A DNA stretch of 64,000 nt from Adineta vaga. Taxonomy: Eukaryota > Animalia > Rotifera. The notes beneath the pieces were generated by a model. The model had not been told where the DNA came from. It did no database searches and saw nothing but the letters and a program-made list of their open reading frames with translations. Positions 27,093 through 48,570 of the stretch are shown here, one piece after another. Every line of letters begins with the position of its first letter. The stretch's first letter is position 1. The stretch is from assembly GCA_021613535.1 (NCBI GenBank), contig CP075494.1:3410001-3474000 (forward strand), given 5' to 3'. The position numbers and the translations under genes were made by a program.

Positions 27093-30000
27093 TTATTCAT
27101 TGGATTCATTCTTGAATGAGTTATTGAGCTAGAAGAAAATAATTAATGTAAAGATAAGAAATTTAAAAAACAAATAACAATAAACTTACATTTACTGTGA
27201 GAAGAGCTTTTTGTATAGCACTACGTATTTGTCGATTGTATTGTGGATTGACAACAGAAACAAATTCGACGAGTAAATTATCACGACTAAACGTACTTAA
27301 ACTTGTAACTTTAACATGTTTTAATCCATTTCTTTCATATTTTTTTATTTCGCTCTTTAAACTTCGTTTGAAGCGTTGAACAAATTTTTTGGCAGCAAGT
27401 TTAGATAGACGTTCAACTGTAACATCTTCGACAATAAATGAAGAAAATATATAACGTAGTGCACATTGTCTACATTGACCATCATAAGCATTGCTATTGA
27501 GAGTAACATCTGATGTACTTGTAACAATCTAAATTCATAATTGATTTTATGTATTTTACTTTTTTTTGTGAGATTTCTGTAAAATATTATTAATGATCAA
27601 ATTCAAGATTTTACTTCTCTTTATCTTATATTGAACAAGTGCAGTAAAACATATACATGTCTAACAAGGTATCGCAAGACAGTGATAACAGCTTAACGAT
27701 ACTGATATACGACAAGTTCTACAGACATTATCTATAAAAAGTGTAATTAATGTCTTCTTAATGTTAACGAATATTATTAGTAAGTTGTGCACATTTTCTC
27801 AATCTACTCAGGTGTTGAACAAATGACTACTCTGAGTGTCAACACAGCAATCTTTAGATTTTTGAGTGGACTAGATCAATTTTTGATGAAAATCTTTTTC
27901 AATACGTACTCGTTTGATTCCATTGCGAGAAGGTTTTCTGCCAGACGGACGATAGCGATATGATTTTCTAGGACGAGAGAAAGGTCGTTGATCATCATCT
28001 GAATCACCGGATTGATCATCGTTGTCATCATTATCTTTTTTCGGCTTTCCTAAAATAAATCTTTTATTTAAGATGAACGAGATACAGAAAAAAAAGATAT
28101 ATAATCAGTATTTTTCTTTCTTCAAACGATTCATTTGTAGTTGATTCCTGTAAACACATTTTCGATGACTATCTTATACTGTAGCGATCAATCTTATCTG
28201 GATGTTTTATAATCGTTCAGTTTCAAGTTTTTACCAACAGTAATTCTTCCTTTAGACAGTGATAATTTACATACTAAATCCGCTCCAAAGCATTTCTTTG
28301 TGAGAAAAAGTAAAATAAAATAAGACAGTCCAACTGGTCAACTGGTGTCTGTTCTATCTCTGTCTTACTGATATTTAGTGTGAAAACGAGCTACAAATTC
28401 ATTGTTTTATTATTCCGAATGCCTCGACAAATGATGATTCGATTCAAAATTGAAATGTCTATTCTTTGAATCGATATTTTCACTCCTCTCATTTGATTGT
28501 GCGCAACTGTCACCTATTTTACAATTGTTTTTCTTTCTCTAGTAAACTATTTAGGAATTCTTGTTCTCTTACCTGTAATTTGTTTACGAACGTAATAATT
28601 CTGCTTACCTTTACATCCGCAATTTTTCTTTTTACCATCCCCTTTATTGTCATCCCCGCTTGACGATTCACTCGATTTTTCATCATCTGTTTCTCCAGTT
28701 GAGCCATTATCTGGTTGAGTAGTGACTGGTGCTGAAGTCGCAGCAGACGCTGTAGTTGCTTGCTGAGTAGTGACGGGTGTGCTTGAGATAGTGCTGGCCA
28801 CTGCTGCACTTGTTGGTTGTGTAGTTTTCACAGATGTTTCGATTGGTTCGGTTGGCGAAGAGCTGCTGCCTTGCGTACCTAAATAACGATAACTTCGAAC
28901 TCGATGATTTATCTCATGTCGGAAGACCACTAAACGTGTATATGAATGTCTTAAAGAAGCTTATCAAAGAAGATCTAGTATGGACTATAAGGTGTTTAAC
29001 AGAATGACTTACCAGCTCTCATACAACAGTGAAAAGATGGAGCTTGAATATCTCCTGAATTGTCACCAAACATCAACTTTTACACTGTGCTAACACTTGT
29101 ATAGAATTAAGGACATATGATAGCAAGTACTAATGGCTCTACAATTCTATTGATCCGTGTAAAACATATTTGTCAATAACTTCTAGTGACAGAAAAAATC
29201 CAGCTCTCCATGCGTGTCAATCGCTTAGTTCCCGCTCAACTAGTATCTTCATGACAATATCAGTGCTAGGATTTTGAATTAACGGATAAGAGGCTATTGT
29301 GAAGTAGAACTGTTAAAATCACAGTACCTGTACAAACTACCGCATTCGTGCTTGGTTCATGGGAACATATTGCATTCTCATTACATCCACCATTGTCCAC
29401 TTTGCAGCTGTCTGTAGAAAAACGGAAAAAGAGAACGAAAAATAATTAATCACGTTGTGACAAAGCTTTTTCTAAGCCAGTACCTTGACACACTAACGCC
29501 GTTGCCGATCTCGAAGCTGTGAAGCCTGTGTTGCATGTACATTTCACTGCATTAGTGTTGGAATCATGCGAGCACACAGCATTTTTATCGCAACCGCCAT
29601 TGTTCACCTCGCAGCTATCTGAAGAGAAAAACAAAAAGAAAAGAATGAATCACCTCATGTTTAAGTGGCTACTAATTATAAGACAGTACCTGTACACACT
29701 AATGATGTTCCCGATCCTGAACTTGTGAATCCTGCTTTGCATGTACAAACAACTGCATTTGTTCCTGAAGCATGTGAACAGATAGCATTAACATTACATC
29801 CACCGTTCTGAATACCACAGGCATCTGAGTGAAGGAAGAAAAAGGAAAAGGACAAAAGTTTAATTGTCGTCAGGCTCTTCGATTACACAGTACCTGTGCA
29901 TATGACCAATGCGCCTGATCCTGAAGATATGTAACCTGTCTTACAAGTACATACAATTGCATTGGTATCAGAATCATGTGAACAGTCAGCATTTGTATCA

Positions 30001-33000
30001 CATCCGCCGTTGTTAAATTTACAGGCGTCTGAAAAAGAATCGAAAAGAGAAAAGAATGAAATCAGAAAGTAAGAGTTAAGTAGTTATCGGACAGTACCTT
30101 TACAGGTTAATAATGTTCCTAGACCTGAACCTATAAATCCAGCCTTGCACGTACACACTACTGCATTGGTACTAGAATCACGCGAGCACACAGCATTTTG
30201 ATCACATCCACCATTGTTCACCTTGCAGCTATCTGAAGAAGAAAAGTCGAACAGAAAATAAAGTCGTCAATAACTAAACAAGCTCCATTCTTATGACCAT
30301 ACCTATGCATACAACCGATGTATCAGATCCTGAATTTACAAATCCTGGCTTGCATGTACATGTCACTGCATTAGTCTTTTCGTCATGCGAACATATAGCA
30401 TTGCTATTACATCCACCGTTGTCGACCTTGCAGGCATCTGAAAAAAGTGATGACGAAGAAGTAAGTACTATGGTGCTACTGGATGAATTTGTTGTAGATG
30501 TTACCTGTACATACTAACGATGATCCCGATCCTGAGCCAGTGAATCCTGTTTTGCATGTGCATGTTACTGCACTACTGTCAGAATCATAGGAACAATCAG
30601 CATTTTTATCACAACCACCATTGTTCACATTGCAGGTGTCTGTAAAGACGAAAAGATTATGAAGAAATGAAGAAGCTAATGATATATGTATGAATATTTA
30701 AATGATATTACCTTTACATACTAATGAGTTTCCATCTTGGAGACCTGTGAAACCGGCCTTGCATTTACAAACGACTGCATTTGTGGTCGAATCATGCGTA
30801 CATTGGGCATTCTTATCACATCCACCATTGTTCGTGTTGCAACTATCTGAATAAGAAAATACGTTGACAAAAGTTCGACACCTAAGGGTTTACGCGAAAC
30901 TATTCGTATCTGACTAGAAGCTTATTAACGAGTATTGTGATCATAAATAGAGGTGGATGATACTGGAAAAATTGAAGAATTTCTTGTCAAGTAAGAGAAG
31001 GCAACATATGCCAATATTTTAATTAGAAAATCAAAATAAGTTTATCGCAGTTCACTCCTCCAAGAGTGAGAAGAATTGACTACCAGTAACGCTGACGGAT
31101 TCGTTTGCTTAAAAGCGGAATAGAGTACACCGCTCGTCTTTTATAAGTAAAGCCTAATGAATAGCGTCGATTGACTAGATATATTGAATATATAATTGAC
31201 CGCCTTTTGTCAAATAAAAATCGTGGCGAAAGGATGTATCTTTCTTTCTATTATTGTCTTGCTAGTTATTACATCAACTGATTTAGCACTTGAATAATCG
31301 ATTCTACCTCAATCATCTTCATGCTTCCACATATATAATGGATTCGCGTGAGATTTTTTCCGTTTTTTTTAAAGTTGCCGAGAACGGTAGAGAAAAGGAG
31401 TACGAATATCTTTCGAACTACAAGAAAACTCTGGATATGAATGCTGATCTTCAATTAGAACTAAACATATCTCCTAGAGAACCGCGACGTACAACAATGC
31501 TCTCTCGAATCCCTACATCGCAACATTGCGTCGGTCACTGATAGACTTTTCATTTATCGGATAACAGGCTATTGCGAAGTAGAACTGTTAAAAACACAGT
31601 ACCTGTACAAACTAACGATGTTCCAAGACCAGAACCTGTAAATCCAGTCTTGCACGTACAAACCACTGCATTCGTGCTTGGTTCATTCGAACATATTGCA
31701 TTCTTATTACATCCACCATTGTTCACGTTGCAGCTGTCTGTAGAAAAATGGAAAAAAACAAGGAAAGGTAATTAATCATGTTGTGATAACTATTGCTAAG
31801 CTAGTACCTTGACATACTAACGCCGTTCCAGATCCTGAACCTGTGAATCCTGTCTTGCATGTACATTTCACTGCATTAGTGTTGGAATCACGTGAACACA
31901 CAGCATTTTTATTACAACCGCCATTGTTCACAGTGCAAGTATCTACAGAAAAAGAGAACGAAAGGTAATTAATCATGTTGTGACAACTATTTCTAAGTCA
32001 GTACCTTGACACACTAATGATGTTCCCAATCCTGAACCTGTGAATCCTGGCTTGCATGTACATTTCACTGCATTAGTCTTTGAATCATGTGAACACACAG
32101 CATTTTGATCACAGCCACCATTGTTTACCTCGCAGCTATCTGAAGAGAAAAAGAAAGAAAGAAAGGAATAACGGCTACTCAAATAACAACCGATCCTAAG
32201 CCAATACCTTGACACACTAACGCCGTTCCAGATCCTGAACCTGTGAATCCTGCTTTGCATGTACATTCCACTGCATCAGTCTTTGAATCATGTGAACACA
32301 CAGCATTTTGATCACAGCCACCATTGTTTTCTTGGCAGACATCTGGAGTAGGGATAGCTAAACGAAAAAGAGAGATACCATAGACCAAACTAGATAGGAA
32401 TCTCTTGCTATGTTAGTACCTTCGCACACTAATGACGTTCCAGAACCTGAACCGGCATATCCTGGTTTGCAGCTACAATTGACTGCATTTGTATCTGAAT
32501 CATGAAAACACAGAGCATTGTTGTCGCATCCACCGTTTTTCAGGCTGCAGCTATCTAAAGCATACGCAAAGATGGACGAAAATGTACTTAGCAGTTACAC
32601 GAGAGTCGTGAATTAGATAGTACCTTTGCATATCAACGCTGTTCCTGATCCTGAACCTGTGAAGCCTGTCTTGCATGTACATTTCACTGCATTTGTATTG
32701 GAATCATGTGAACAAACAGCATTGATATCACATCCACCATTGTTTACGGTGCAGCTGTCTGAAAAAGCAGAGTCAGAGGGAAAAGGAAGCATTTTATGGC
32801 TATGCAACAATTATTCGTAAAACGGTACCTTCACAAACTAGCGATCTTCCTGAACCTGAGCTTGTGAATCCTGTCTTGCATGTACAAACTACTTCATTTG
32901 TTTTCGAATCATGGGAACAAGCAGCATTCTTATCGCATCCGCCATTGTTCACATTACAACTATCTGAAGAATGAAAAAGAAATATTTAACGACTATACAT

Positions 33001-36000
33001 TAGCTCTTGTGAAAAACAGTACCTGTACACACTGATGATGTTTCCGATCCTGAAGTTGTGAATCCTATCTTGCATGTACATTTCACGGCGTTTGTTTTGG
33101 AATCATGCGAACAGATAGCATTGACGTCGCATCCACCATTGTTTATATTGCAGGTGTCTGATGAATGCAAAATAAGTATTTAATTATGATGCAACAACTG
33201 TTTATAAAATAGTACCTGTGCATACTATTGATTCTCCTGAGCGTGAACTTGTGAATCCTGTCTTGCATGTACAAACCACTGCATTCGTATCTGGAGCATG
33301 AGAACAATCAGCGTTCTTATCACATCCTCCATTGTTCACGGTACAGGCGTCTAAGAAGAAAAAGACGGAGAAAAAGAGAAGTAATAATTACTTCAAAAAC
33401 TTATTTATAGAATATTACCTGTACAGATAAAAGATGCTCCCAAACCTGAACTTATGAATCCAGGTTTACATGTACAATATACGGCGTTTGTATCTGCATT
33501 ATGGGAACAAACAGCGTTGACAGGGCATCCACCATTATTCACTGTGCAGGTATCTGCATAGAAAGACAAAGAGAAAAGAAAAAGGAATAATAGATGTGAA
33601 TTATGTAAAACGTTGGCGATGTGGTAATACCTGTACATGTTAACGATGTTCCCTCACCAGAACTTGTATATCCTGTCTTGCATGTACAAACTACTTCATT
33701 TGTGTTTGAGTCATGCGAACACGCAGCATTGATATTGCATCCGCCATTATTTACGTTACAGCTGTCTGAGAAATGAAAAAGAAGAAGGAATGGAGAAAAA
33801 TAAGGACCACGAGTAATTAAGCGTTAATCTTTTGATATGATAGTACCTGTGCATTGTTGCGATGATTCCGAACCCGATCCTGAATTGATGAATCCCGTGT
33901 TGCATGTACAAACCACTGCATTCGTATCTGGGGCATGAGAACAACGAGCATTAATATCACATCCTCCATTGTTCACTTGACAGCTGTCTAGAAGTAAATT
34001 GAAAGTGGAAAAATTAAGGTTTTATGATAATTCATGATTTGAATTTTTTCATTATTGGAGACGATAAGAAGAGAAGAAAGGCTTATGAAAAATTTGGTTA
34101 GATACTGCCATACAATCATTGGTGAAAATCTTAAGCTTTTGAGAATGAGATAAGAACAGTAATCATAGAGAGCTCGAATAAAACAATCATCTGCATGAGT
34201 TTTGAATAGCTTCTACATAGTTCACAGCAGTCTCTTATTCAATGAATAAATCCATGATCGATCTTTCTAGCTCTTTCAAAAATAGATTTATAAAGAATAA
34301 ATTCGATATTCTACTAAAATAAAAATTGATAACAACAAATTCTTGAACAGCTTCATATAACTCTGCGAGATATCACAGAGACTTGTTGGAAAACTAATAT
34401 ATGATGATTATTCTTGCTCCTGATCCAAACTCATCTTACTTTTTTGAGTCTTCTTACATATCTGTTAAACTTCAAACAACAGTTAACATCTTCCTAAAAT
34501 GTTGTCTGATACATATATGATTTTGTCATCATGCTGAGTATTTCTTCATTCGAATCAATTAAAACAAGATCAGTGCTGAATGCTGATATGTTTTTTTTTT
34601 CATATAGTAAACAATTACCTTTGCATACGATTGGTCCGCCTGTTGACACATCAGAATAACCTTTTCTACATGTGCATATCACTGCGAACGTTGCTGAATT
34701 ATGAGAACAATCTGAGTTCTTATCACATCCACCATTGTTCACCTTGCAAGTATCTAAATAAAATGAAAGTGACCGAAATAATACTCTGTTATCGTAAAGT
34801 TGCTGAAAGTGAATGAAGTTACCTATGCAAACTAAGGGAGAACCATCTGTTGCGGGTGCATATCCGACATTACAGCTACATTTTACGGCATCTGTGCTTG
34901 AATCATACGAACATGCGGCATTCTTATCACATCCACCATTGTTCACCTTGCATTTGTCTGAAAAAGGATAGAAGAAAAACCAATTAGAATACGTATATTA
35001 AGCACTTGAACAAAACTGAATAATCAACGCTGAGCGCCCAGTGATACAACTAGTTTGCGTATTCTATTTGTGTGTTAGAAAATGTATCTCACATAATATG
35101 ATGCAACGGAACCGGCAATAAGAATCAAAATATCAAAATGGAAATAGTAGACTTATGTGATCGAAGTTAATTTTTCTAACTAAAAAATACTTCAGACGTA
35201 CTTGAAGTATGCAGTTCTTTTCTTAGAAAATATACTGCTAGACATACTTCAAGACCAATCTGATTTGTGTACGACAATAAATATGTAAATTTATTTATTA
35301 GATTGCACCGAACGATCAATGAAGATAATACTCTGAAACATATTGAGCAACTCACGCGAAAACCTTACAAAAAGTAGAAGACATGAGTAGTACATCAGCA
35401 GATATTATATCACTAATCTAATCGTATAAGATAATACGATTTCCAAAATTAAGGCAATGTGTAAGATCATAAACAAAGATCTGACAAGAATAGACAACGT
35501 TCTTGGACGAGATTCTCAGACTAATCGGACATAAGATCTCATCGTATCTAACAATATCCTAGGTACGTTTTCTGAGTCGGTAATATACTTAAGTGCAAAC
35601 ACATATGTATGGATAGAATTATAAGAGTGAACGTTTTATGGCATACGTCGAAGAATACCTAGGAAATGAACTTCAACTTACAGATATACAGCAGAGAAGT
35701 TTTGACGATACAAACCGAGAGTATGTGAAGAAAGCAACTAATTATATATTGAACACACGAGGATACGACTCGATGAGGGTATTTGAGATTATATTGTGAA
35801 TTTCACTATATATTCGTTATAGTTATGTAGATATGGTTTATCATATTGAAATGAACTCAAAGTGAAATTTGACGCTATGATTTGAAATATGCATAAAAAC
35901 ACTTTATTCATGGACTCTGTATACTAAGCTTACTGTAAATATCCTCCCGAAGTGAAAGAAACGATGACTTTAAACAATAACTTGTATAAATTTGTGCGAT

Positions 36001-39000
36001 TAAAAGCTAGCCTTTCATATTTACATACAAAGATCTGTAATAAAACTTCTTATATGATTCTCTGCGATTAATGAGATCTTTCCGTCGGGAATAAGTAAAA
36101 AAGTCATTCGTCGAGATTCCAATATGATTCCGACGAAGTACCGAACACACATTTTCAAAAACTTTCTCATGTACTCACCAGAATCAGAAGAACGATCTCT
36201 AGGTAAACACACGCGTAAAGCAATATCATCAATAAGTATATCGTTGCCTACTCCACCAGGAGCATTTGAAATCATCAACAGATTAACGGTGCTGGTTGAA
36301 GCGACGAATGAAATACCATATTTGGTCCATGTTACACTGCTAGCTTCAGGTATGTTGCCTGTTGTGAATTGGGCAAGTAGAGCTTTGTCAGCTGCCGTAC
36401 TTCGAACTTCAAATAATATATTTGGTTGAATACCGGTAATTAACAATGGATTCGCCAAATAAACGGAAAACTCATATCTTTTACCAACAACTAGATTTTG
36501 TATTGTACCATTGAAAAATTGACCAGCATTATAGTCTGCATTTACCAAATACATATATCCACCTTTGTCACCTGTATGATCTCCTGCTACTTCGAGCCAT
36601 GCATCGTATTCGCGACCTCTCTTGATACTATTGAGAAAAGCGAATTGTCCGTCGTTTGGTATCGGTTCGAATTTTTGTTGGTAACTTGTACTAAAACCAA
36701 AGTCGGCAGGTTTTGCTTTCGAATATGCATCAGATCCAGCACCAAATGTGACTGAGAAAACTGGTTTTTCTTGATATGTGGAATCGACATCACACAAGCC
36801 ACTAGATTCTAAACAACACAACGATACAAAGTAAATATTCACGAGACGCCAACAGAAATAAACTTTAACTCACCGATTTCACATGTTGGACCACTGAAAC
36901 CTTCGGGACACGTACACGTATTTTTGCCGGTACATTTTCCTTTGTTTTTACATGCAGGATTGCATACGTTTTCAACTGCACGAGAAGAGAGATAAATATT
37001 GATGAGAAGCAAAATTTACAGAAGTGTGCAACATACTGTTTTCACAAGTTGGACCGCTGAAAGCAACAGGACATGTGCACGTATTTTTACCAGTACACTT
37101 GCCACCATTTTGACATGCGGGAGTACATGCAACGTCGCCTAAAAATGACAGAAAACGTATTATGATGTATTCTGTACAAGGCAAGTGAAACTATTATACG
37201 GTTACATTATCCAAAGTCTGCCAATTCCAATTTAAAGCAACATTCTCGAGATTATGTTTCAACCTCTGCTGTTTTCTCTATTTCTTACATGTGACTTTGG
37301 AGAGGGTAATTCTTCACACCTATGTGGAAACGAGACTCTAGTTTCGATACGATCATGTACAATCGGAATTATACAACACTTCCAAAGCTTCTTCTAGACA
37401 GATCAATGAAGATCATATGCTGAACGATCGAATAGAAAATCATGTATATATACGGGTGTATATGATTTAGTTATATCCAATATCGGGTACCTTTAATGTG
37501 ACTAATAGTTTTTCAAATCTACTCGATTATATAACGAATATTTTCGGACGGTCTCTCCTGTACTGACCTGAGCAACCACGCAATGTAATATCATCAATAA
37601 CAAGATCGTTTCCGATTCCACCAGGAGCATTTGAAATCATCAACAGATTGACGGTGCTTGTTGAGGCGATGAATGATATACCGTATTTTGTCCATGTTAA
37701 AGTCTTGTATTCAGGTATGTCGCCTGTTGATAATTGGGCAAGTAGAGCTTTGTCAGCTGCCGCACTTCGAACTTCGAATAACACATTTGGTTTAATTCCA
37801 CTAATTGCCAAGAGATTGGCCACATAAACGGAGAATTCATATCTTCGGCCAACAACTAGATCTTTGATTGTACCACTGTAAAACTGACCAGTACTATAGT
37901 CTGCATTCACCAAATACATATATCCACCTTTGTCACCTGTATGATCTCCTGTTCCTAAGTGCCATGCAGTACCTTCGCGATCTTTCTGAATGCTATTAAT
38001 GAAAGAGAATTCTCCATCGTTCGCTACAGGAACGAATCGTTGTCGATAAGTTGTACTAAAACCAAAGTCAGAAGGTTTTGCTTTGGAATACTGGTCAGAG
38101 CCAGCGCCAAATGTAATTGAGAAAACTGGCTTCTCTTCGCATGTGTAACGGTCATTCGATAAGCCACTAGATCCTGAGAAACAAAAAAGAGCAGAAAAAG
38201 AACATGAATGTCATCGAAAGGTGAACTAAACTTTTATCTCACCGATTTCACAAGTTGGACCAGTGTAACCATCCGTGCATACACATGTATTTTGAGCACT
38301 ACATTTTCCATTGTTTTGACATGGAGGATTGCATACCTTTTCAGCTGAAGGAGAAGAGTGATAAATATTAACGAGAAGGAAAATTGAAAGAAGTGTGCAA
38401 CATACTGTTTTCACAAGTTGGACCGGTAAAACCAGTGGGACATGTGCATTGATTATTACCAGTACATTTACCATTATTTTGACATTTCGGGGTGCATTGG
38501 ACGTCGGCTAAATGACAGGAGAATTGTTAAGATTAATTAGGTGTAAAAAAAAGCAAGTGAAAGTATTATTCAAGAAGAGTTTTAGATAGCTCGTAACTGA
38601 ATAAGAAACAATATTTTGAAGACAATGTGTGTTCCAGATGCACTCGGTGTATATCTTTCGCGGAATTTTGAAATGAGAGATTCGTGTACCATATGTCGTA
38701 AGAAGGAGATGGAATGGGCGTGAGGTTATCAATCGGAATTTTTCAAAACTTTGTAGACGTGTCCGAGGTAAATCCTGCAAGATTATATGGTCTAGGAGCA
38801 AATAGACAGTCTTCTATATATACGAACTTATAGTTTCCTTCTCTAACTCGTATTTGTACCTCTAATGTGACTAAGACTGTTTCGAATTCTACAAGAATCT
38901 ATTGGAAAGATTTTGCTAAGAGTTACATGTACTAACCTGAACAAGCGCGTAATGCAATGTCATCAATAACAAGATCGTTTCCGATTCCACCAGGAGCATT

Positions 39001-42000
39001 TGAAATCATCAACAGATTGACGGTACTTGTTGAGGCGATGAATGAAATACCGTATTTTGTCCATGTTAAAGTCTTGTATTCAGGTATGTCACCTGTTGAC
39101 AATTGGGCAAGTAGGGCTTTGTCAGCTGCCGTACTTCGAACTTCGAATAACACATTTGGTTTAATCGCTGGAAATGTCATGAGATTGGCCACATAAACGG
39201 AGAATTCATATCTTCGGCCAACAACTAGATCTTTGATTGTACCACTGTAAAACTGACCAGTACTATAGTCTGCATTCACCAAATACATATATCCACCTTT
39301 GTCACCTGTATGATCTCCTGTTCCTAAGTGCCATGCAGTACCCTCGCGATCTTTCTGAAGGCTATTAATGAAAGAGAATTCTCCATCATTCGCTACAGGA
39401 ACGAGTCGTTGTCGATAAGTTGTACTAAAACCAAAGTCAGAAGGTTTTGCTTTGGAATATTGGTCAGAGCCAGCGCCAAATGTAATTGAGAAAACTGGCT
39501 TCTCTTCGCATATGTAACGATCATTCGATAAGCCACCGGATTCTGAGACGAGAAGAAACAAAGACGCAAAATGAACATTAATGACACATCAAAAAGAATA
39601 AACTTTAACTCACGGATTTCACATGTTGAACCACTGAAACCTTCGGGACATATACATTTATTTTGAGCACTACATTTTCCATTGTTTTGACATGGAGGAT
39701 TGCATACCTTTTCAACTGCACGAGAAGAGAGATAAATATTGATGAGAAGCAAAATTGAAAGAAGTGTGCAACATACTGTTTTCACAAGTTGGACCGCTAA
39801 AACCAGTTGGACATGTGCATATATTATTACCAATACATTTACCATTATTTTGACATTTGTTAAAACATTGGATTTCGGCTGAAAAGAGAGTAGAATTTGG
39901 AAGATGAAGTCTGTGAAACAAAGGGAACACTTTATATACTAATTCTTTCCGAAACCTGGGAGTTCCATTGGTAGCAACGCTTTGGAGATTATTTCTTATC
40001 ATATAATATGTGCTCTATTTGCTTCACATGACATTGAAGCGAGAAATTCTTCCGACATATATCAAAGGAAGATCGTAGAAGCTATTCGAGAACAAATGCT
40101 GCACGATCTAATAGAGAATCGTATATAGACACAATCTGTTATTCCCTTGTTATATCTAATGTCTTTACTTTTTATGTGACTAAAATTGCTTTGAGTTTTC
40201 CTCGATTATATTACGTGATTGTGGGAAGTTTTCTCGTATACTAACCTGAACAAGCACGCAATGCAATGTCATCGATAAGAATATCGTTTCCGTCTCCACC
40301 AGGAGCATTTGAAATCATCAACAGATTAACGGTGCTGGTTGAAGCGACGAATGAAATACCATATTTGGTCCATGTTATACTGCTCGCTTCAGGTATGTTG
40401 CCTGTTGTTAATTGGGCAAGTAGAGCTTTGTCAGTTGCCGTACTTCGAACTTCGAATAACACATTTGGTTTAATTCCACTAATTGCCAAAACATTCGCAA
40501 CATAGACGGAGAACTCATATCTTCCGCCAACAACTAGATCTCTTATTGTACCATTGAAAAACTGACCAGCATTATTGTCTGCATTCACCAAATACATATA
40601 TCCACCTTTGTCACCTGTATGATCTCCCGCTACATTGAGCCATGTATCGTATTCGCGACCTTTCTTAATACTACTGATGAAAGAGAATTGTCCATCCCTT
40701 GTAAGTGGTTCGTATCGTTGTTGATAAGTGGTACTAAAACCAAAGTCGGAAGGTTTTGCTTTCGAATATACATCAGAGCCAGCACCAAATGTGACTGAGA
40801 AAACTGGCTTCTCTTCGCATGTGTAACGATCATTCGATAAGCCACCGGATTCTGAGACGAGAAGAAACAAAGACGCAAAATGAACATTAATGACACATCA
40901 AAAAGAATAAACTTTAACTCACGGATTTCACATGTTGGACCACTGAAACCTTCTGGACACGTACACGTATTTTTGCCGGTACATTTTCCATTGTTTTTAC
41001 ATGCAGGATTGCATGTGATACCTTCTGAAACGGCAAGAGAAACCATTAATAAATGTTATGCGTGAATAACATAAAAGGAGAATAGTTACTAGTCTAATAA
41101 GAAAATTCTATTGTTAGATTAAATCAGATTTTGCACGGTTCTTTTGTAACAAACGATTTTTTATAAGATTTCAGAAAAAAATTCCTAACGAAGTCGGTTA
41201 AACTATGGTTACGCGAATCTAGCACAAAATGAGAAGGTATGAACTGTTAAAAACTTTATATAATGTTCTATATGAAAATACTGACTTGTCACTTTGATGT
41301 GAAGAAAGGTCGAATAAAATGTTTCTAATTCATAGAAGAATTATTACTTATTGTAGTAAAAAAGTTGATAAGGGTTCTAATGTAAAAACATATATCCCTA
41401 TTATAAGCTCTATTTGATATGAATTTAGAGTTTTTAGGAAGTATCGATTGAGTTCGATTTGTCAGTTTAGAAGGCTTCTCTTAAAAAAATGATGAACCTG
41501 AGTAAGGGATAAATTGTTTGTCTAAAAGGATTCACATAGAAGCTATTCAAGAATATTTTTCATTATATGAAAAAAAAAACTTCGCGCAACATATAAATCT
41601 AAGATTGTCTTAAGTACAGGGTGTCCCAAAAGTCCTGTCCACTTAAAAAATGTGTTTAACTCCACTATTATACAAGGTTAGTATAATCCTTGTTTTGTTT
41701 TGTTTTAAAGAAGAGAGCGTAGACTTTTTTTTATATAGTACAAAGTTTGTAAATTCCCTTGAAAGGCTATCCTCTCTGGTGACAATATGAAAATTTAGAT
41801 TTTGCTAAAAGTCGAAGACAACCAACAGTTTTCAACAATTTTATCGCTCAGATATCTCGGCCTAAGAAAATAAACAAATTTTGATCTGTTTGCCAAAAAA
41901 TGCACAATGAAAAGCTCTACAAAAACTGCATAAATCAATTCTGTTGATTTGCTATGGTGGCTTTTTCCTTACTCAATATGAGCAACCTATATGGTACAAA

Positions 42001-45000
42001 TATCTGGAGCACTTTTTTTGTTTTGCAAATATCTTGACATAAGAAAAAATTAAAAGCTTAAATTTTGTTGTGAGAGATGCGGCTTCGAAAGCCCTACCTA
42101 AAGTCTATAGCTGCAAACGAAAACGTCTGTCAGGCATTTTTATTCAGCTTTAAAGTAGTAGTACTATGTAGGTTGTTCATATTGTCACCAGAAAGGATAA
42201 CCTTTCAAGAGAGTTGAGACACTTTGTACTATCTAAAAACAATTTCATGCTTTCTTCTTTAAAACAAAAAGAGATTAAACTAAGTTTGTATAGTAGTGGA
42301 GTTAAACACATATTTTAAGTGGGCAGATCTTCTGGGACATTCTGTCTAACTGGCAGTGTAAATATAATCTGTAAATATTCGGAGACATCATATAAAAGAA
42401 ATGTTCGGTCCAACTCTGTTCAAAAGATTACCTTTGCATACCAAGGATAGACCACAACCTGTACTTATATATCCACTTGCACAAGTACATTTCACTGCAT
42501 TTGTGATTGGTTCATGAGAGCAATAAGCATTAGTATTACATCCACCGTTATTGATTTGGCAGAGATCTATTTTTAAAAAAAAGTAAATTGATTCAGATTA
42601 TAATGAACAAATGAACAAACTGATTTTTCGTGCTCACAATCATAGAAACCAATTCAAAATCTGAGACGATTATAGATTAATAGAAATCTTTGAACATAGC
42701 TCATTCTCAAGTTCACTGTTGTTATCATAAAGCAATTTAGTCACAACTCCATAATAATCATTAGAGATGAAGAAGATTCTAGTATTATTCGTTCATATGA
42801 AATTCTAGAACATGCCGTTTTATCTTGCAACTTCCTTTCGATTCCTATTGAACTGGATGAATATGACTAGACTTTCATATGTTTGCAATTGATCATTAAT
42901 TACTGAAAAACACGAACAGTAATGATAAAAATGAAACAGTGATCTGTCTTCATTTTTCGACAATACACGAGAGCTCATTTGTAATAGTAGAACTCAAAGA
43001 ATTAATCTGTCTCTTTTCAAAGCGAAGCGAATACCAATATAAAATCTGGTTGATCCCTCGAAATGATTCAGTATATATGATACATGTTATTTTACAAGAA
43101 CTCCTATCGTACAATACAGTTTCTAAGCATTTGTACATTGTTAAACTCGATAAATTTTTTTTTTATGTGCAGAGTAAATTTCTTACGCTTGATTACCGTT
43201 CATGTGCATCTTTATATCATATTTTCGAAATATCTTAAATCTATAATTTGCTATTATATAATGATATGTAATATAGAATTCTTACTGCATACTATCTAAT
43301 ATTCTAATAAGATTGTATGAATCAATGTTCCGAAGGATCACATTGTACAAAACGTTTTCGTTCTTTTTTCCAATGTTCAGTCGATCTCAACCCTTTCAAG
43401 TTGCTGCACATAGAAGCTGATAAATTTTGAAAAACTTCATCCGAGAAAACTAGAAATCGCCTTAAAAATAGTTTTTATGTCCATTATTCTTCCTAATAAA
43501 CTAATGTTATAGCTGCTAGACAGTTATATCTTAATCTAGTATCGAAGGTCTCAGATATTTTTCAAGTTCTGATTTGTGTTTTGTTATAGGCTAGTTAAAA
43601 CGAAATCTTTACTATCATTTGTAGTTTAAGTAGTTTTATGTGGTAATACCTAAGTTTAGTTTTGAAAGAACTGTTTGTAAACTATGTGCACGGTTCACGT
43701 ACAATGACTGTAGACAAACTACAAGGTTCGAAAAGATACTATTCTAGAAGTATAATAAAATTATTTCAGATAGTGCTATAATGACGAATTTTCTACTATG
43801 ACTAAAATCAATCTCTCCGTGACGGTGTAACGTTTGGTTATATTTGTAATTCATAAGATTCTCGAGATTTTCAGTATTCGATAGGTAAAAACTTTCATAA
43901 ATCTTGTTGACTTATATGAATGAACTCTATTTTGACGAGCTCTGATTTAGTATAAAATTCTACATTAGTGCTATACAAAACGAAAACGCTACGTTCTCGT
44001 TCTGTGGTAGAGAATCTACCTAACTTAACAGAAACTACAATAAAATCCTTTTTTTTATCTATACCCGTCAGTACACAAAAACAGTTATACTAAAACACAA
44101 ATCTACGAATAATTTCCTCTCATGATTCTTTAAAAAAAATATTTCTGCATAACAAAATCTTTCAATGGAACTTTTAATATACTATTTCTCATCAAAAGAC
44201 TGCTTTTTAAAAAGTGTGAAAGCCAACACGAATATATCTTTGATCTTAACTAACTACTTAGCAATTACCGGTGCATTGTACAGCTGAAGCGGAGCCTGTA
44301 TTTCTAAAGCCATTTTTACATGTACATTTGACTGCATAAGTTGCGCATTCATGAGAACAAGCAGCATTAGTATCGCATCCACCATTGTTCACTTTACAGC
44401 TATCTAGAATAGATTTTTTATGAATATTTTCATTGTTTATTTCTGTTAAATGACGACTTCAAATAAATAACATTACCTGTGCAGACTACACTTGTAGAGG
44501 AACCTGTATTTGTATAACCAGTTTTGCAAGTACATGTAACCGTGCCAGTCGTGGAACTTGATGAGCAAACAGAATTTAAAGGGCATCCACCATTATTTAT
44601 GGTGCATTTGGCTAAAAAATATGTAAAACTTTCTTAACTACACGATAAGATGGCATTAGCATCGGTGCATAGAATCATCTCAAGACCAAATTTAGAGATA
44701 ACATGCTAGTCAATCTCTATAACTTAGGATATAAACGAAGGAGTAAACTCATAGATTAATCGATACAATAAAAATCATTCATTCAGAATGAATCATATTA
44801 GAACGAACATGATCGATTTGTTCTTTCCAAACCATCGGTACAACTGTTCCGTGAGAGGTTGAAAAAGAAATGCACTATCGTTTATAGAATTGTATTCTAC
44901 ACATCCCAAGATATAAACATCAATTGTCAGAACAACGGAGAACATTGTATCTTATATCCGCCCACTCTCATAACATAGAGCTGGAAAACAGCACTTTTTA

Positions 45001-47339: not shown

Positions 47340-48570
47340 GAAAAAAATCGACTATTTCTCGACGTTTCGCAGTTACTGATACATCAGCTGCGACTTTGTC
47401 ATGGATTCCATTGGTTACAATTTTAACTAATTCATTATAAGTTTGTTTAGATGGTTTTAAAGGAATTTCTGGAATAAATCTCATTTGTTCTTGTAAAAGT
47501 TCGACTTTTTAATCAGGTATATAACCAGTTAACTTTGTTATTAGATTTCCTGTGCAATTTCGAACATAATTAACAATTGTAAATGGTAGTGATTCGATCA
47601 TGCTAATTCGTAAAGTAACATCAGAAAGTATGATACGACCAGTTAGATGTTATTAATACAGATCCTGGCCATACAATTATATTGATACCTGTCAATGGTT
47701 GTCATTCAATAACATATCTGAATGCACAAAACGACAATTAAAACAGTATAACGATCCAGAAAATTATTTTGGTTCATATTCTTTCCAAATTTCATAAGCT
47801 GAATTCGTCAATAATGTTGTATTAATTGGTTCAACTATTGACATTCCAATCAATTTTGAATGAAAAATTGAATCAAAGGAAGTTAATGATACATGTGAAC
47901 TTGATATCTATATAAATTTTGGATCAAGTACATCGGAATTAAGTATTTCTTGTCGAATTAATCGAGTATAATTTGATTCAGCTCATACAACAACAATTCG
48001 TATTGAACGACGTTTTAATTGTGGTTTTACATTATCTTGAATTTGAAATGTTTTAATATAAGAAATAAGTACATTTGTCACTTGTAAACCATAATTAAGA
48101 AATGTATTTGTGATTGCTTGAGCATCATTTGATCCGAAGGCATCCGATTGACGAATCATTATACAGGATGCCCAATTATATTGAAGAAATAATTTCATAA
48201 TCGCTAACGCAGCAGTATATTATCTGAAGGAACTGTACGATAAAAAGTAAGTTGGATAATTATATATTGATCAGATAAATCAGAATCAGTTGCAGCATAT
48301 GATATCACAGAAATACCGATTATTTCAGTAAAAGGAGTAATAATAATATTAGGTTTACAAGATAAATCTAGATCTATGATATCAAGAATAGTAAATGTTT
48401 TACATGTCCCACTAATAGCATTGGTAATATTTCCACTATAGTTTCAATTGATTGCCATATTCAATATATCCATTGTCGATAGTTATATTATATCGTTGAG
48501 AATAAGTTATTTCAGATATATTTTCTGTATCTTGAAATAATCCTTATAATTGAATATTAGAAGAATTCAT
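47340..48570 (-). pseudogene. Decayed ionotropic glutamate receptor-like gene (ANF/LIVBP N-terminal domain + S1 segment)
   Basis: Fragments ISYAATDSDLSD..YP..YRTVPSD, KLFLQYNWASC.MI.QSDAFG, RISMIESLPFTIV, TGYIPD*, TYNELV..V.NG..D...ADVSVTAKRREIVDF. Many stops and frameshifts. Confidence 0.7.

What the first reader, a model, noticed from the sequence alone, without database searches (positions are those of the whole stretch)
36179..40851. A bacterial-type domain domesticated as a shuffle-ready exon inside an animal EGF-repeat protein
Seen: four copies of a ~200-aa domain, each encoded by exactly one symmetric phase 1-1 exon, are interleaved with EGF exons in a signal-peptide-bearing gene. Recalled knowledge: the signature DHTG...GYM.LVNA...G.F....I..L.....YEF.....N...PN..F.......TG.IP....W..YG..F........L....NAPGG.GND..IDDI....C is typical of Bacteroidetes surface proteins with T9SS/gliding-motility C-terminal domains, probably a carbohydrate-binding-like beta-sandwich. 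Inference: a horizontally acquired domain gained flanking phase-1 introns and entered metazoan exon shuffling. The product would be a chimeric adhesive, lectin or glue-like protein.
Basis: partly seen in the sequence, partly recalled or inferred. Interest (0 to 1): 0.8.

Follow-up and report, generated by a model that had tools for sequence, protein, structure and literature searches.

The report
Bacterial surface-protein domain inside rotifer EGF gene
A bdelloid rotifer (Adineta vaga) gene carries four single-exon copies of a sugar-binding-like domain that is otherwise found only in secreted surface proteins of Bacteroidota bacteria, spliced between ordinary animal EGF exons: a clear case of a horizontally acquired domain built into an animal mosaic protein.

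Summary
On the minus strand, four exons (606, 606, 606 and 630 nt) each encode one ~200-aa domain. All four have phase-1 splice sites at both ends and alternate with EGF exons. The public Adineta vaga gene model I4U23_022823 (1263 aa) uses exactly these junctions.

- **Relatives:** the domain's only close relatives outside bdelloid rotifers are N-terminal domains of Bacteroidota T9SS type-B (CHU_C) "gliding-motility-associated" proteins. These are 33-50% identical over the full length and occur in at least 523 bacterial genome loci.
- **Distribution:** every named eukaryotic hit is a bdelloid (Adineta, Rotaria, Didymodactylos).
- **Not a MAM domain:** canonical MAM domains exist elsewhere in this genome and are distinct. 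Pfam MAM scores only 15.5 bits here, against a cut-off of 26.4.
- **Fold:** the predicted fold is a CBM/MAM-like beta-sandwich.
- **Introns:** the seven A. vaga paralogues whose junction was read all share an acceptor-type junction just upstream of the domain; a matching phase-1 donor is readable in four.
- **Origin of the four copies:** they come from tandem duplication of an EGF-EGF-domain cassette, introns included.

Splicing is shown only for a paralogue, in a poly(A) metatranscriptome contig. The ML tree nests rotifers among the bacteria, but an AU test does not reject the alternative (p = 0.22). Function is untested.

Horizontal gene transfer in bdelloids is well known. This is a new, tidy domain-level example.

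The parts
40246..40851 (-). Domain exon D1 (606 nt, phase 1-1)
38937..39542 (-). Domain exon D2 (606 nt, phase 1-1); 94% aa identity to D3
37568..38173 (-). Domain exon D3 (606 nt, phase 1-1)
36179..36808 (-). Domain exon D4 (630 nt, phase 1-1; short Ser/Asp-rich tail before the donor)
40924..41025 (-). EGF exon preceding D1 (in-frame block of the public model)
39778..39879 (-). EGF exon a of cassette 2
39615..39713 (-). EGF exon b of cassette 2; the 71-nt intron to D2 is identical to the one before D1
38407..38508 (-). EGF exon a of cassette 3
38241..38342 (-). EGF exon b of cassette 3
37038..37136 (-). EGF exon a of cassette 4
36875..36973 (-). EGF exon b of cassette 4
42433..44609 (-). Three upstream EGF_3-type ('C.xNNGGC') exons included in the public model (44478-44609, 44270-44404, 42433-42567)
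29269..34997 (-). Downstream array of about 35 EGF_3-type single exons. Not in the public model; whether it belongs to the same transcript is unresolved.
27187..27528 (-). Exon 80% identical to the C-terminus of the A. ricciae orthologue P0114. This suggests the ancestral gene ran on to here, through a mucin-like Ser/Thr stretch at 28550-28960.

Best explanation
The window lies on chromosome 5 of the bdelloid rotifer Adineta vaga.

Shown:
- The four exons encode a ~200-aa beta-sandwich domain related to CBM, DUF642 and MAM folds.
- It belongs to a large, unnamed family that otherwise forms the N-terminal domain of Bacteroidota proteins exported by the type IX secretion system. Those proteins have the layout signal peptide - this domain - PKD/Ig repeats - CHU_C type-B sorting tail.

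Inferred history:
- An ancestor of living bdelloids took the domain from a Bacteroidota donor, closest to a Cytophaga aurantiaca-type subgroup.
- The domain became one exon joined behind host cysteine-rich or EGF exons through a phase-1 intron. All seven A. vaga paralogues examined have an acceptor-type junction at this spot, with a matching phase-1 donor readable in four.
- In the Adineta lineage leading to this gene it also gained a 3' phase-1 intron. That made it a symmetric 1-1 module, like the EGF exons around it.
- In A. vaga a three-exon cassette (EGF-EGF-domain, period about 1.31-1.37 kb) was then duplicated in tandem, introns included, with later gene conversion. The A. ricciae orthologue has one copy; A. 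vaga has four.

Inferred, not shown: the product is an extracellular mosaic protein that presents four ligand-binding (probably glycan-binding) modules on EGF spacers, working as an adhesive or recognition protein.
For: - **Species:** hit P0126 is an A. vaga protein on a contig of 13,893,210 bases, the length of G000 contig C6. P0272 is the A. vaga model for this locus.
- **Homology to bacteria:** the alignment is collinear over the full length with invariant TFG.G, DHT, PN..F, W..Y and GND..DDI motifs. At least 523 bacterial loci match at 33-42% identity, nearly all Bacteroidota. The best bacterial identity is 50.5% over 192 aa (P0131). The exhaustive HMMER search gave 4785 cluster representatives at E <= 1e-3; its top 150 are bdelloid-type proteins or proteins with bacterial T9SS hallmarks.
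- **Bacterial architecture:** CHU_C/TIGR04131 tails.
- **Structure:** ESM Atlas nearest neighbours are all Bacteroidota CHU_C proteins, TM 0.79-0.86. The PDB fold class is CBM/HpiC1/MAM.
- **Restricted eukaryotic range:** named eukaryotic hits are only Adineta, Rotaria and Didymodactylos.
- **Trees:** in FastTree on 315 domains, the rotifer-type clade has 147 sequences and no bacteria (support 0.94), and groups with 14 Bacteroidota sequences (support 0.999). In IQ-TREE PMSF on 72 domains, rotifers form one group (89) and rotifers plus those 14 form a clade at 98.
- **Genuinely integrated:** introns with GT-AG sites, about 41% GC exons in a 33% GC window, dN/dS of 0.24-0.43 between copies.
- **Shared 5' junction in paralogues:**
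- **Cassette duplication:**
- **RNA-level splicing of EGF to domain in a paralogue:** the poly(A)-tailed metatranscriptome contig L092 is continuous exactly where A. vaga paralogues have 60-1400 nt introns.
- **Not a canonical MAM domain:**
Against: - Splicing here rests on the public gene model, splice signals, phases and conservation.
- No signal peptide was found, and the 5' end of the public model looks chimeric. The 3' end (a 6-codon mini-exon) is doubtful, since the A. ricciae orthologue continues into EGF, mucin and a conserved C-terminus.
- The trees are unrooted. An AU test does not reject a tree in which the two bacterial groups sit together with rotifers outside them (delta lnL 19.3, p = 0.22).
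- The closest bacterial proteins come from unnamed metagenome contigs, so the donor lineage is only approximate.
- Only the top 150 of 4785 hits could be inspected, and most rotifer-type hits are unnamed metagenome fragments.
- The AF2 alignment included two bacterial rows.
- Ligand binding and localisation are untested.
Confidence: 0.78

Rival explanations
1. The domain is a fast-evolving vertical descendant of the metazoan MAM domain. The bacterial proteins are only distant superfamily members, or acquired it from animals long ago.
For: Pfam MAM is the only Pfam family that touches the domain (E 0.016-0.3). The DHT..G.Y motif is MAM-like. MAM structures appear among the Foldseek hits (4gwm and 8yt7, TM 0.53-0.56).
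Against: The MAM score is 15.5 bits against a cut-off of 26.4. Bacterial members score the same or better against MAM (22.8 bits), so rotifers are not the link to MAM. Bacterial relatives match at E 1e-30 to 1e-53 and up to 50% identity. A. vaga has 86 canonical MAM matches, up to 115 bits, and none lies at these 15 loci. No non-bdelloid animal appears in any search.
Confidence: 0.04
2. The transfer went the other way, or both acquired the domain from a third source: a bdelloid (or other eukaryotic) invention was passed to Bacteroidota.
For: The trees are unrooted and the AU test does not enforce nesting. The rotifer clade is itself very diverse, with about 100 clusters at 50% identity.
Against: The bacterial family is far larger and deeper: thousands of clusters, several classes of Bacteroidota plus a few other phyla, often several divergent copies per protein. 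The rotifer stem is short (0.13) and sits next to one bacterial subgroup. The domain is always an intron-free unit embedded in a typically bacterial T9SS architecture.
Confidence: 0.05
3. The horizontal origin is right, but the 'shuffle-ready exon' reading over-interprets. The four copies are only a recent local tandem duplication, and the locus may be partly non-functional or mis-modelled (several genes or pseudo-exons rather than one EGF-domain protein).
For: Cassette introns are alignable, and one is 100% identical between cassettes 1 and 2. The ends of the public model look artificial. There are no RNA data for this gene. Some family copies elsewhere carry stops.
Against: All 11 cassette exons keep open frames, canonical splice sites and compatible phases. 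dN/dS is 0.24-0.43. The A. ricciae orthologue keeps EGF-EGF-domain-EGF. The family occurs with EGF, DETD-CGG cysteine modules, FN3, TM-anchored EGF tails and as triple tandems. A paralogue mRNA shows the splice.
Confidence: 0.1
4. Bacterial contamination or an assembly artefact.
For: None beyond the bacterial affinity of the domain.
Against: The exons lie in a chromosome-scale contig between spliceosomal introns and EGF exons. There are 15 dispersed copies in the genome, and orthologues exist in at least six other bdelloid assemblies.
Confidence: 0.01

Closest known systems
N-terminal domain of Bacteroidota 'gliding motility-associated C-terminal domain-containing' / T9SS type B sorting proteins (e.g. 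the Cytophaga aurantiaca 1082-aa protein P0145 and the Mucilaginibacter polytrichastri protein P0096)
   Same: The same ~190-aa domain end to end, with the same invariant motifs. Identity is 33-50% and predicted structures superpose at TM 0.8-0.86.
   Different: In bacteria the domain follows a signal peptide directly, has no introns, and is followed by PKD/Ig/SprB repeats and a CHU_C tail. In the rotifer it is a spliced exon flanked by EGF modules, with no T9SS tail. The domain has no Pfam or NCBIfam model of its own, and its function is unknown in bacteria too.
MAM domain (PF00629; meprin, A5/neuropilin, RPTP mu)
   Same: Jelly-roll beta-sandwich with a DHT..G.Y-type motif, extracellular mosaic context, and often phase 1-1 exons in animals (the last point is from general knowledge).
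   Different: It scores below the Pfam threshold (15.5 against 26.4 bits). It has two cysteines, not the four conserved MAM cysteines. It carries an extra N-terminal ~60-aa region shared with the bacterial family. Canonical MAM domains in the same genome are a separate set.
CBM4/CBM22/CBM16-type carbohydrate-binding modules, DUF642 and HpiC1-like cyclases
   Same: These are the best PDB fold matches (E 1e-6 to 5e-5, TM 0.45-0.59). Language-model neighbours are DUF642 and CBM_4_9.
   Different: There is no significant sequence match (the best PDB sequence hit has E 0.12). The ligand site is not identifiable.
Foreign (horizontally acquired) genes of bdelloid rotifers
   Same: Bacterial origin, integration in the chromosome, gain of spliceosomal introns and family expansion. 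These are established features of bdelloid genomes (general knowledge; mentioned in PMC8878817).
   Different: Here only a domain was taken up, not a whole enzyme gene. It was turned into a symmetric-phase module that recombines with animal EGF and other extracellular modules. I found no paper describing this family.

Membership tests
Unnamed Bacteroidota T9SS-cargo N-terminal beta-sandwich domain family | Significant, full-length collinear sequence homology | tested here: met
   E 1e-16 to 1e-53, 33-50% identity over about 186-192 of 201 residues
Unnamed Bacteroidota T9SS-cargo N-terminal beta-sandwich domain family | Shared invariant motifs (TFG.G; DHT..G[YF]; PN..F; W..Y; GND..DDI) | tested here: met
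   20 invariant columns across 12 rotifer and 2 bacterial sequences
Unnamed Bacteroidota T9SS-cargo N-terminal beta-sandwich domain family | Same predicted fold | tested here: met
   TM 0.79-0.86, rmsd about 2 A, over about 190 residues to Bacteroidota CHU_C protein models. The AF2 input alignment included 2 bacterial rows.
Unnamed Bacteroidota T9SS-cargo N-terminal beta-sandwich domain family | Protein context: signal peptide directly upstream, PKD/Ig repeats and a CHU_C sorting tail downstream | tested here: not met
   The rotifer copies are flanked by EGF exons, and no CHU_C tail is present. This is a property of the bacterial proteins, not of the domain.
MAM domain (PF00629) | Pfam gathering score | tested here: not met
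   15.5, 11.3 and 11.5 bits against 26.4
MAM domain (PF00629) | Four conserved cysteines (general knowledge of MAM) | tested here: not met
   D1-D3 have two cysteines, one near each end; D4 has a different pair
CBM_4_9 / DUF642 | Pfam match | tested here: not met
   No hit at E <= 1 for the rotifer domain. The only resemblance is by fold and language-model features.
CBM_4_9 / DUF642 | Carbohydrate binding | not testable with these tools
   Needs a glycan array or ITC with recombinant domain
EGF-like domain (the flanking exons) | Six-cysteine pattern and Pfam thresholds | tested here: met
   Regex hits. EGF_2 54.1 against 22.1, EGF 40 against 21.5, EGF_TEN 86.1 against 65 bits.
Horizontally acquired gene or domain in an animal | Absent from other eukaryotes, present widely in the donor group | tested here: met
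   Named eukaryotic hits are bdelloids only, in three length windows. At least 523 bacterial loci match. Limits: word-based searches, only the top 150 of the exhaustive search seen, and no direct scan of monogonont genomes.
Horizontally acquired gene or domain in an animal | Recipient sequences nested inside donor diversity in a phylogeny | tested here: inconclusive
   ML trees group rotifers with one bacterial subgroup (SH-aLRT 98; FastTree 0.999). The trees are unrooted, and the AU test does not reject the alternative (p = 0.22).
Horizontally acquired gene or domain in an animal | Physically integrated in host DNA (introns, host neighbours) | tested here: met
Horizontally acquired gene or domain in an animal | Expressed and spliced | tested here: inconclusive
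A paralogue mRNA with a poly(A) tail shows EGF|domain splicing. The public gene model agrees.
Class 1-1 exon-shuffling module (Patthy) | One module per exon with phase 1 at both ends | tested here: met
   In most paralogues only the 5' side applies, because the domain exon is terminal.
Class 1-1 exon-shuffling module (Patthy) | Same module found in different domain architectures | tested here: met
   Found with EGF, DETD-CGG cysteine modules, FN3-annotated proteins, EGF plus TM tails, and triple tandems. Whether the module moved by intronic recombination is inferred, not shown.

The most novel reading that the evidence does not exclude
A bacterial T9SS-cargo domain, taken up once by the bdelloid ancestor, became a true class 1-1 shuffling module. 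It spread into many extracellular architectures (EGF, FN3, cysteine-rich, membrane-anchored and mucin-type proteins, about 100 clusters at 50% identity). It now gives bdelloids a lineage-specific family of glycan-recognition or adhesion receptors. This would be an animal extracellular module family of wholly bacterial origin.
Probability: 0.35. Interest if true: 0.7.

Novelty: new member of a known kind. Interest (0 to 1): 0.55.

Why it matters
Bdelloid rotifers are the textbook case of massive gene uptake by an animal, but most documented cases are whole enzyme genes. Here the unit that was kept is a single protein domain. It has been given introns of the phase used by animal extracellular modules, joined to EGF repeats, and then multiplied within one gene and across about 15 loci. 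It shows step by step how foreign DNA can be absorbed into the animal exon-shuffling system.

It also flags a large bacterial domain family (thousands of clusters in Bacteroidota T9SS cargo proteins) that has no Pfam or NCBIfam model and no known function.

Tried and rejected
- **Joined spliced protein:** I did not build or search one. Exons were searched by reference, and the public protein P0272, returned by a search, served as the spliced model.
- **Signal peptide:** a simple hydrophobicity scan of 41-50 kb found none.
- **Pfam on the domain:** only sub-threshold MAM. NCBIfam gave only a partial, sub-threshold NTTRR-F1 hit.
- **PDB sequence search:** only a weak EclA lectin hit, E 0.12.
- **Naming the closest bacterial relatives:** The listing of cluster members gave no taxon names.
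- **First treekit run:** the run on 315 rows did not return. It was replaced by hmmalign plus FastTree.
- **AU test of nesting:** not significant.
- **Literature:** two searches and one paper check found no description of this family.
- **Earlier scan notes:** a search by words returned nothing.
- **Pfam on other exons:** the conserved C-terminal exon and the mucin-like exon gave no family.

Full report
**What is there.** The window is G000:C5:3410001-3474000, in a 100.8-Mb genome of six contigs. One family hit (P0126) is a GenBank protein of Adineta vaga on a contig of 13,893,210 bases, which is the length of contig C6 here. The annotated protein for this locus, P0272, is 'hypothetical protein I4U23_022823 [Adineta vaga]' on a contig the length of C5. 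An earlier scan note had already called this genome a rotifer.

The gene lies on the minus strand. A search of the own genome with copy 1 finds four intact copies in the window, at 40247-40849, 38938-39540, 37569-38171 and 36207-36803. They are 78-81% identical to copy 1. Eleven further copies or fragments lie on four chromosomes.

Reading the sequence shows each copy to be one exon. The acceptors are cag|AA, cag|GA or tag|AA, and the donors are G|GTNAGT. The exons are 606, 606, 606 and 630 nt long, so all four are phase 1 at both ends. Seven six-cysteine EGF exons, also phase 1-1, lie before and between them. Pfam EGF_2, EGF and EGF_TEN pass their cut-offs on the annotated protein. Mapping the public 1263-aa model back onto the window reproduces exactly these exons and junctions.

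The copies differ at dN/dS 0.24-0.43, which indicates coding constraint. I did not build or search a joined spliced sequence myself. Exons were searched by reference, and the public protein returned by a search stood in for the spliced model.

**What was not confirmed.** I could not confirm the signal peptide.
- The public model starts with two exons at 47365-47601. One weakly resembles a glutamate-receptor ligand-binding site, and neither has a signal peptide.
- A simple scan of 41-50 kb found none.
- The model's last exon is a 6-codon stub at 35639-35656.
- The A. ricciae orthologue P0114 (76% identical in the domain) reads EGF-EGF-domain-EGF, then a Pro/Thr mucin-like stretch, then a conserved C-terminus. 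That C-terminus matches window 27187-27528 at 80% identity.

Both ends of the A. vaga model are therefore doubtful. The transcript may run on through the array of about 35 EGF_3-type exons at 29-35 kb.

There are therefore no reads for this gene, and read laying was not used.

**What the domain is.** Pfam gives only a sub-threshold MAM match (15.5 bits against 26.4). The PDB sequence search gives nothing significant.

The word-based protein search returned 94 bdelloid or unnamed metagenome proteins plus a Mucilaginibacter protein (33% identity, E 1e-16) and one other bacterial-looking protein. The rotifer and bacterial sequences align end to end with 20 invariant columns: TFG.G, DHT, G[YF], PN..F, W..Y and GND..DDI.

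At least 523 stretches encode relatives at 33-42% identity, almost all in Bacteroidota (Chitinophagaceae, Sphingobacteriaceae, Cytophagales, some Bacteroidia). There is an occasional Lysobacter, and one bin labelled Sphingomonadales.

In the two bacterial proteins I read in full, the layout is signal peptide, this domain, PKD/Ig/SprB-type repeats, and a T9SS type-B sorting tail (TIGR04131 at 75.6 and 60.4 bits; PF13585 at 78 and 91.6 bits). About 100 further hits carry precomputed PF13585.

The exhaustive HMMER search found 4785 cluster representatives at E <= 1e-3 and 602 at E <= 1e-30. Its top 150 are either bdelloid-type proteins or proteins with bacterial hallmarks: an N-terminal signal peptide, T9SS-type tails in many, and no EGF. 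The most similar bacterial protein, P0131 (916 aa, CHU_C tail), is 50.5% identical to copy 1 over 192 residues. That is as close as the more distant A. vaga paralogues.

**Fold.** AlphaFold2 on the 14-row alignment gave pLDDT 85 and pTM 0.84, an all-beta sandwich. Foldseek against the PDB returns CBMs (porphyran- and alginate-binding modules, CBM4-2, CBM22, CBM16), HpiC1-type cyclases (the DUF642 fold), Cry-toxin domain III and MAM domains of meprin beta and an insect scavenger receptor. All are at E 1e-6 to 5e-5 and TM 0.4-0.6.

Against the ESM Atlas, nine of the ten nearest models shown are Bacteroidota proteins, mostly with T9SS sorting tails (CHU_C or Por_Secre_tail); the tenth has no taxon recorded. 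TM is 0.79-0.86 and rmsd about 2 A. 'Carbohydrate-binding-like beta-sandwich' is therefore a fair description of the fold. Binding itself is untested.

**Is it a diverged animal MAM domain?** No.
- Bacterial members score as well or better against the MAM model (22.8 bits).
- A. vaga has 86 canonical MAM matches, up to 115 bits, and none lies at the 15 loci of this family.
- The domain lacks the MAM cysteine set.

**Distribution and direction of transfer.** Three word-based searches covered proteins of 110-352, 230-731 and 561-1785 aa. Every named eukaryotic hit is a bdelloid: Adineta vaga, A. steineri, A. ricciae, Rotaria socialis, R. sordida, Rotaria sp. and Didymodactylos carnosus. All other named hits are bacterial.

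- **FastTree, 315 domain sequences:** all rotifer-type sequences form one clade of 147 with no bacterial member (support 0.94). That clade groups with 14 Bacteroidota sequences, including the Cytophaga aurantiaca protein, at 0.999. The other ~150 bacterial-type sequences lie outside.
- **IQ-TREE (LG+C20+F+G4 PMSF), 72 sequences:** the same picture. Rotifers form one group (SH-aLRT 89), and rotifers plus the 14 form a clade at 98.
- **Caveats:** the trees are unrooted. An AU test does not reject a tree in which the two main bacterial groups are held together with rotifers outside (delta lnL 19.3, p = 0.22), and that group was defined only after seeing the tree.

The direction of transfer therefore rests mainly on distribution. 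There are thousands of deep bacterial lineages with a typically bacterial secretion architecture, against a single animal order. Presence in Didymodactylos, Rotaria and Adineta points to uptake before the radiation of living bdelloids.

**How it was built into animal genes.** In the seven A. vaga paralogues whose junction I read, the domain exon is preceded by an AG acceptor at the same position, just before the (E/Q)S.GLC start. In four of them (L001-L004) the upstream EGF exon ends ...TG(T/C)GA(A/T)(A/G)T(C/T)C|GT, which makes the intron phase 1. The other three show the acceptor at or near this position (in L006 the motif itself is not evident), but I did not verify a donor or a phase for them. 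In L008 the upstream exon is a different cysteine-rich module. In most paralogues the domain exon is terminal, ending ...GSGFCPS-stop.

The family appears in several contexts:
- after DETD..DCGG cysteine modules;
- after EGF;
- in proteins annotated as fibronectin type III;
- before EGF plus a transmembrane tail;
- as three tandem copies in one open frame.

One metatranscriptome contig (L092, JGI sample 3300056988) ends in a poly(A) tail after an AATAAA signal. It encodes cysteine module, mucin stretch, EGF and domain in one frame. Aligned to A. vaga paralogue loci, it is continuous exactly across the EGF|domain junction, where the genome has introns of 60 to about 1400 nt. This is RNA-level proof of that splice in the family, although not in this gene.

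**The four copies here.** Aligning the four EGFb-intron-domain units shows that introns were copied along with exons. The 71-nt intron is identical in cassettes 1 and 2 and alignable in 3 and 4. Exon similarity is mosaic: D1 resembles D4, and D2 resembles D3 at 94%.

The unit spacing is 1309-1369 nt. The A. ricciae orthologue model has one cassette.

The four copies are therefore a tandem cassette amplification with gene conversion. This was possible without frame disruption because every exon is phase 1-1. They are not four independent shuffling events.

**Function.** This is inference only. The likely product is an extracellular mosaic protein with four CBM/MAM-like modules on EGF spacers, possibly continuing into an EGF array, a mucin-like stalk and a conserved C-terminal domain. 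Ligand (probably glycan) binding for adhesion or recognition is the most likely role. I put this at about 40%.

**Novelty.** Massive horizontal transfer into bdelloids, and intron gain by foreign genes, are established. I found no paper describing this family. Databases call the rotifer proteins 'EGF-like domain-containing' or 'unnamed'. The case is a new member of a known kind. It is notable because only a domain was domesticated and because it took on the exon phase of animal extracellular modules. The bacterial family itself lacks a curated model.

Noticed in passing
window 29269-34997 (minus strand): An array of about 35 single-exon EGF_3-type modules with a 'C.VNNGGCD.NA.CSHDS.TNAV.CTC' pattern (Pfam EGF_3, 35 bits on one exon). 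It lies directly downstream of the fourth domain exon and is not part of the public model of this gene. It is followed by a Ser/Thr mucin-like exon at 28550-28960 and a conserved C-terminal exon at 27187-27528.
   Followed up: partly
window 47365-47601 (minus strand): The first two exons of the public model I4U23_022823 have no signal peptide. One weakly matches the ionotropic glutamate-receptor ligand-binding site (PF10613, E 0.002, below cut-off). The annotated 5' end is probably borrowed from a neighbouring gene or gene fragment.
   Followed up: partly
G000:C4:4856536-4886422: A ~30-kb run of more than 50 canonical MAM-domain matches (up to 115 bits) on one strand. This is either a giant MAM-repeat gene or a gene cluster.
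   Followed up: no
L009:2-1309 (G000:C1, minus strand): An intron-free open frame of 436+ aa with an Orn/Lys/Arg decarboxylase major domain (PF01276, 232 bits) lies 3.7 kb from a family paralogue that carries an in-frame TGA. It is possibly another foreign gene.
   Followed up: partly
G000:C1:11107526-11108092, C3:2958319-2958627, C5:258917-259183: Three family copies with in-frame stops or truncation. They are likely pseudogenes.
   Followed up: no
P0098 and its cluster (27 members, metagenome contigs up to 45 kb): A bdelloid-type protein with three tandem copies of the domain in one uninterrupted open frame, with no EGF and no introns between copies. This is a different way of multiplying the same module.
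   Followed up: partly
L003/L004 upstream exons; P0034, P0037, P0110, P0112: A recurrent ~35-aa cysteine module 'C.D..KNQDETD.DCGG..CP.C' precedes the EGF and domain exons in many family members. It was not identified with any Pfam family here.
   Followed up: no
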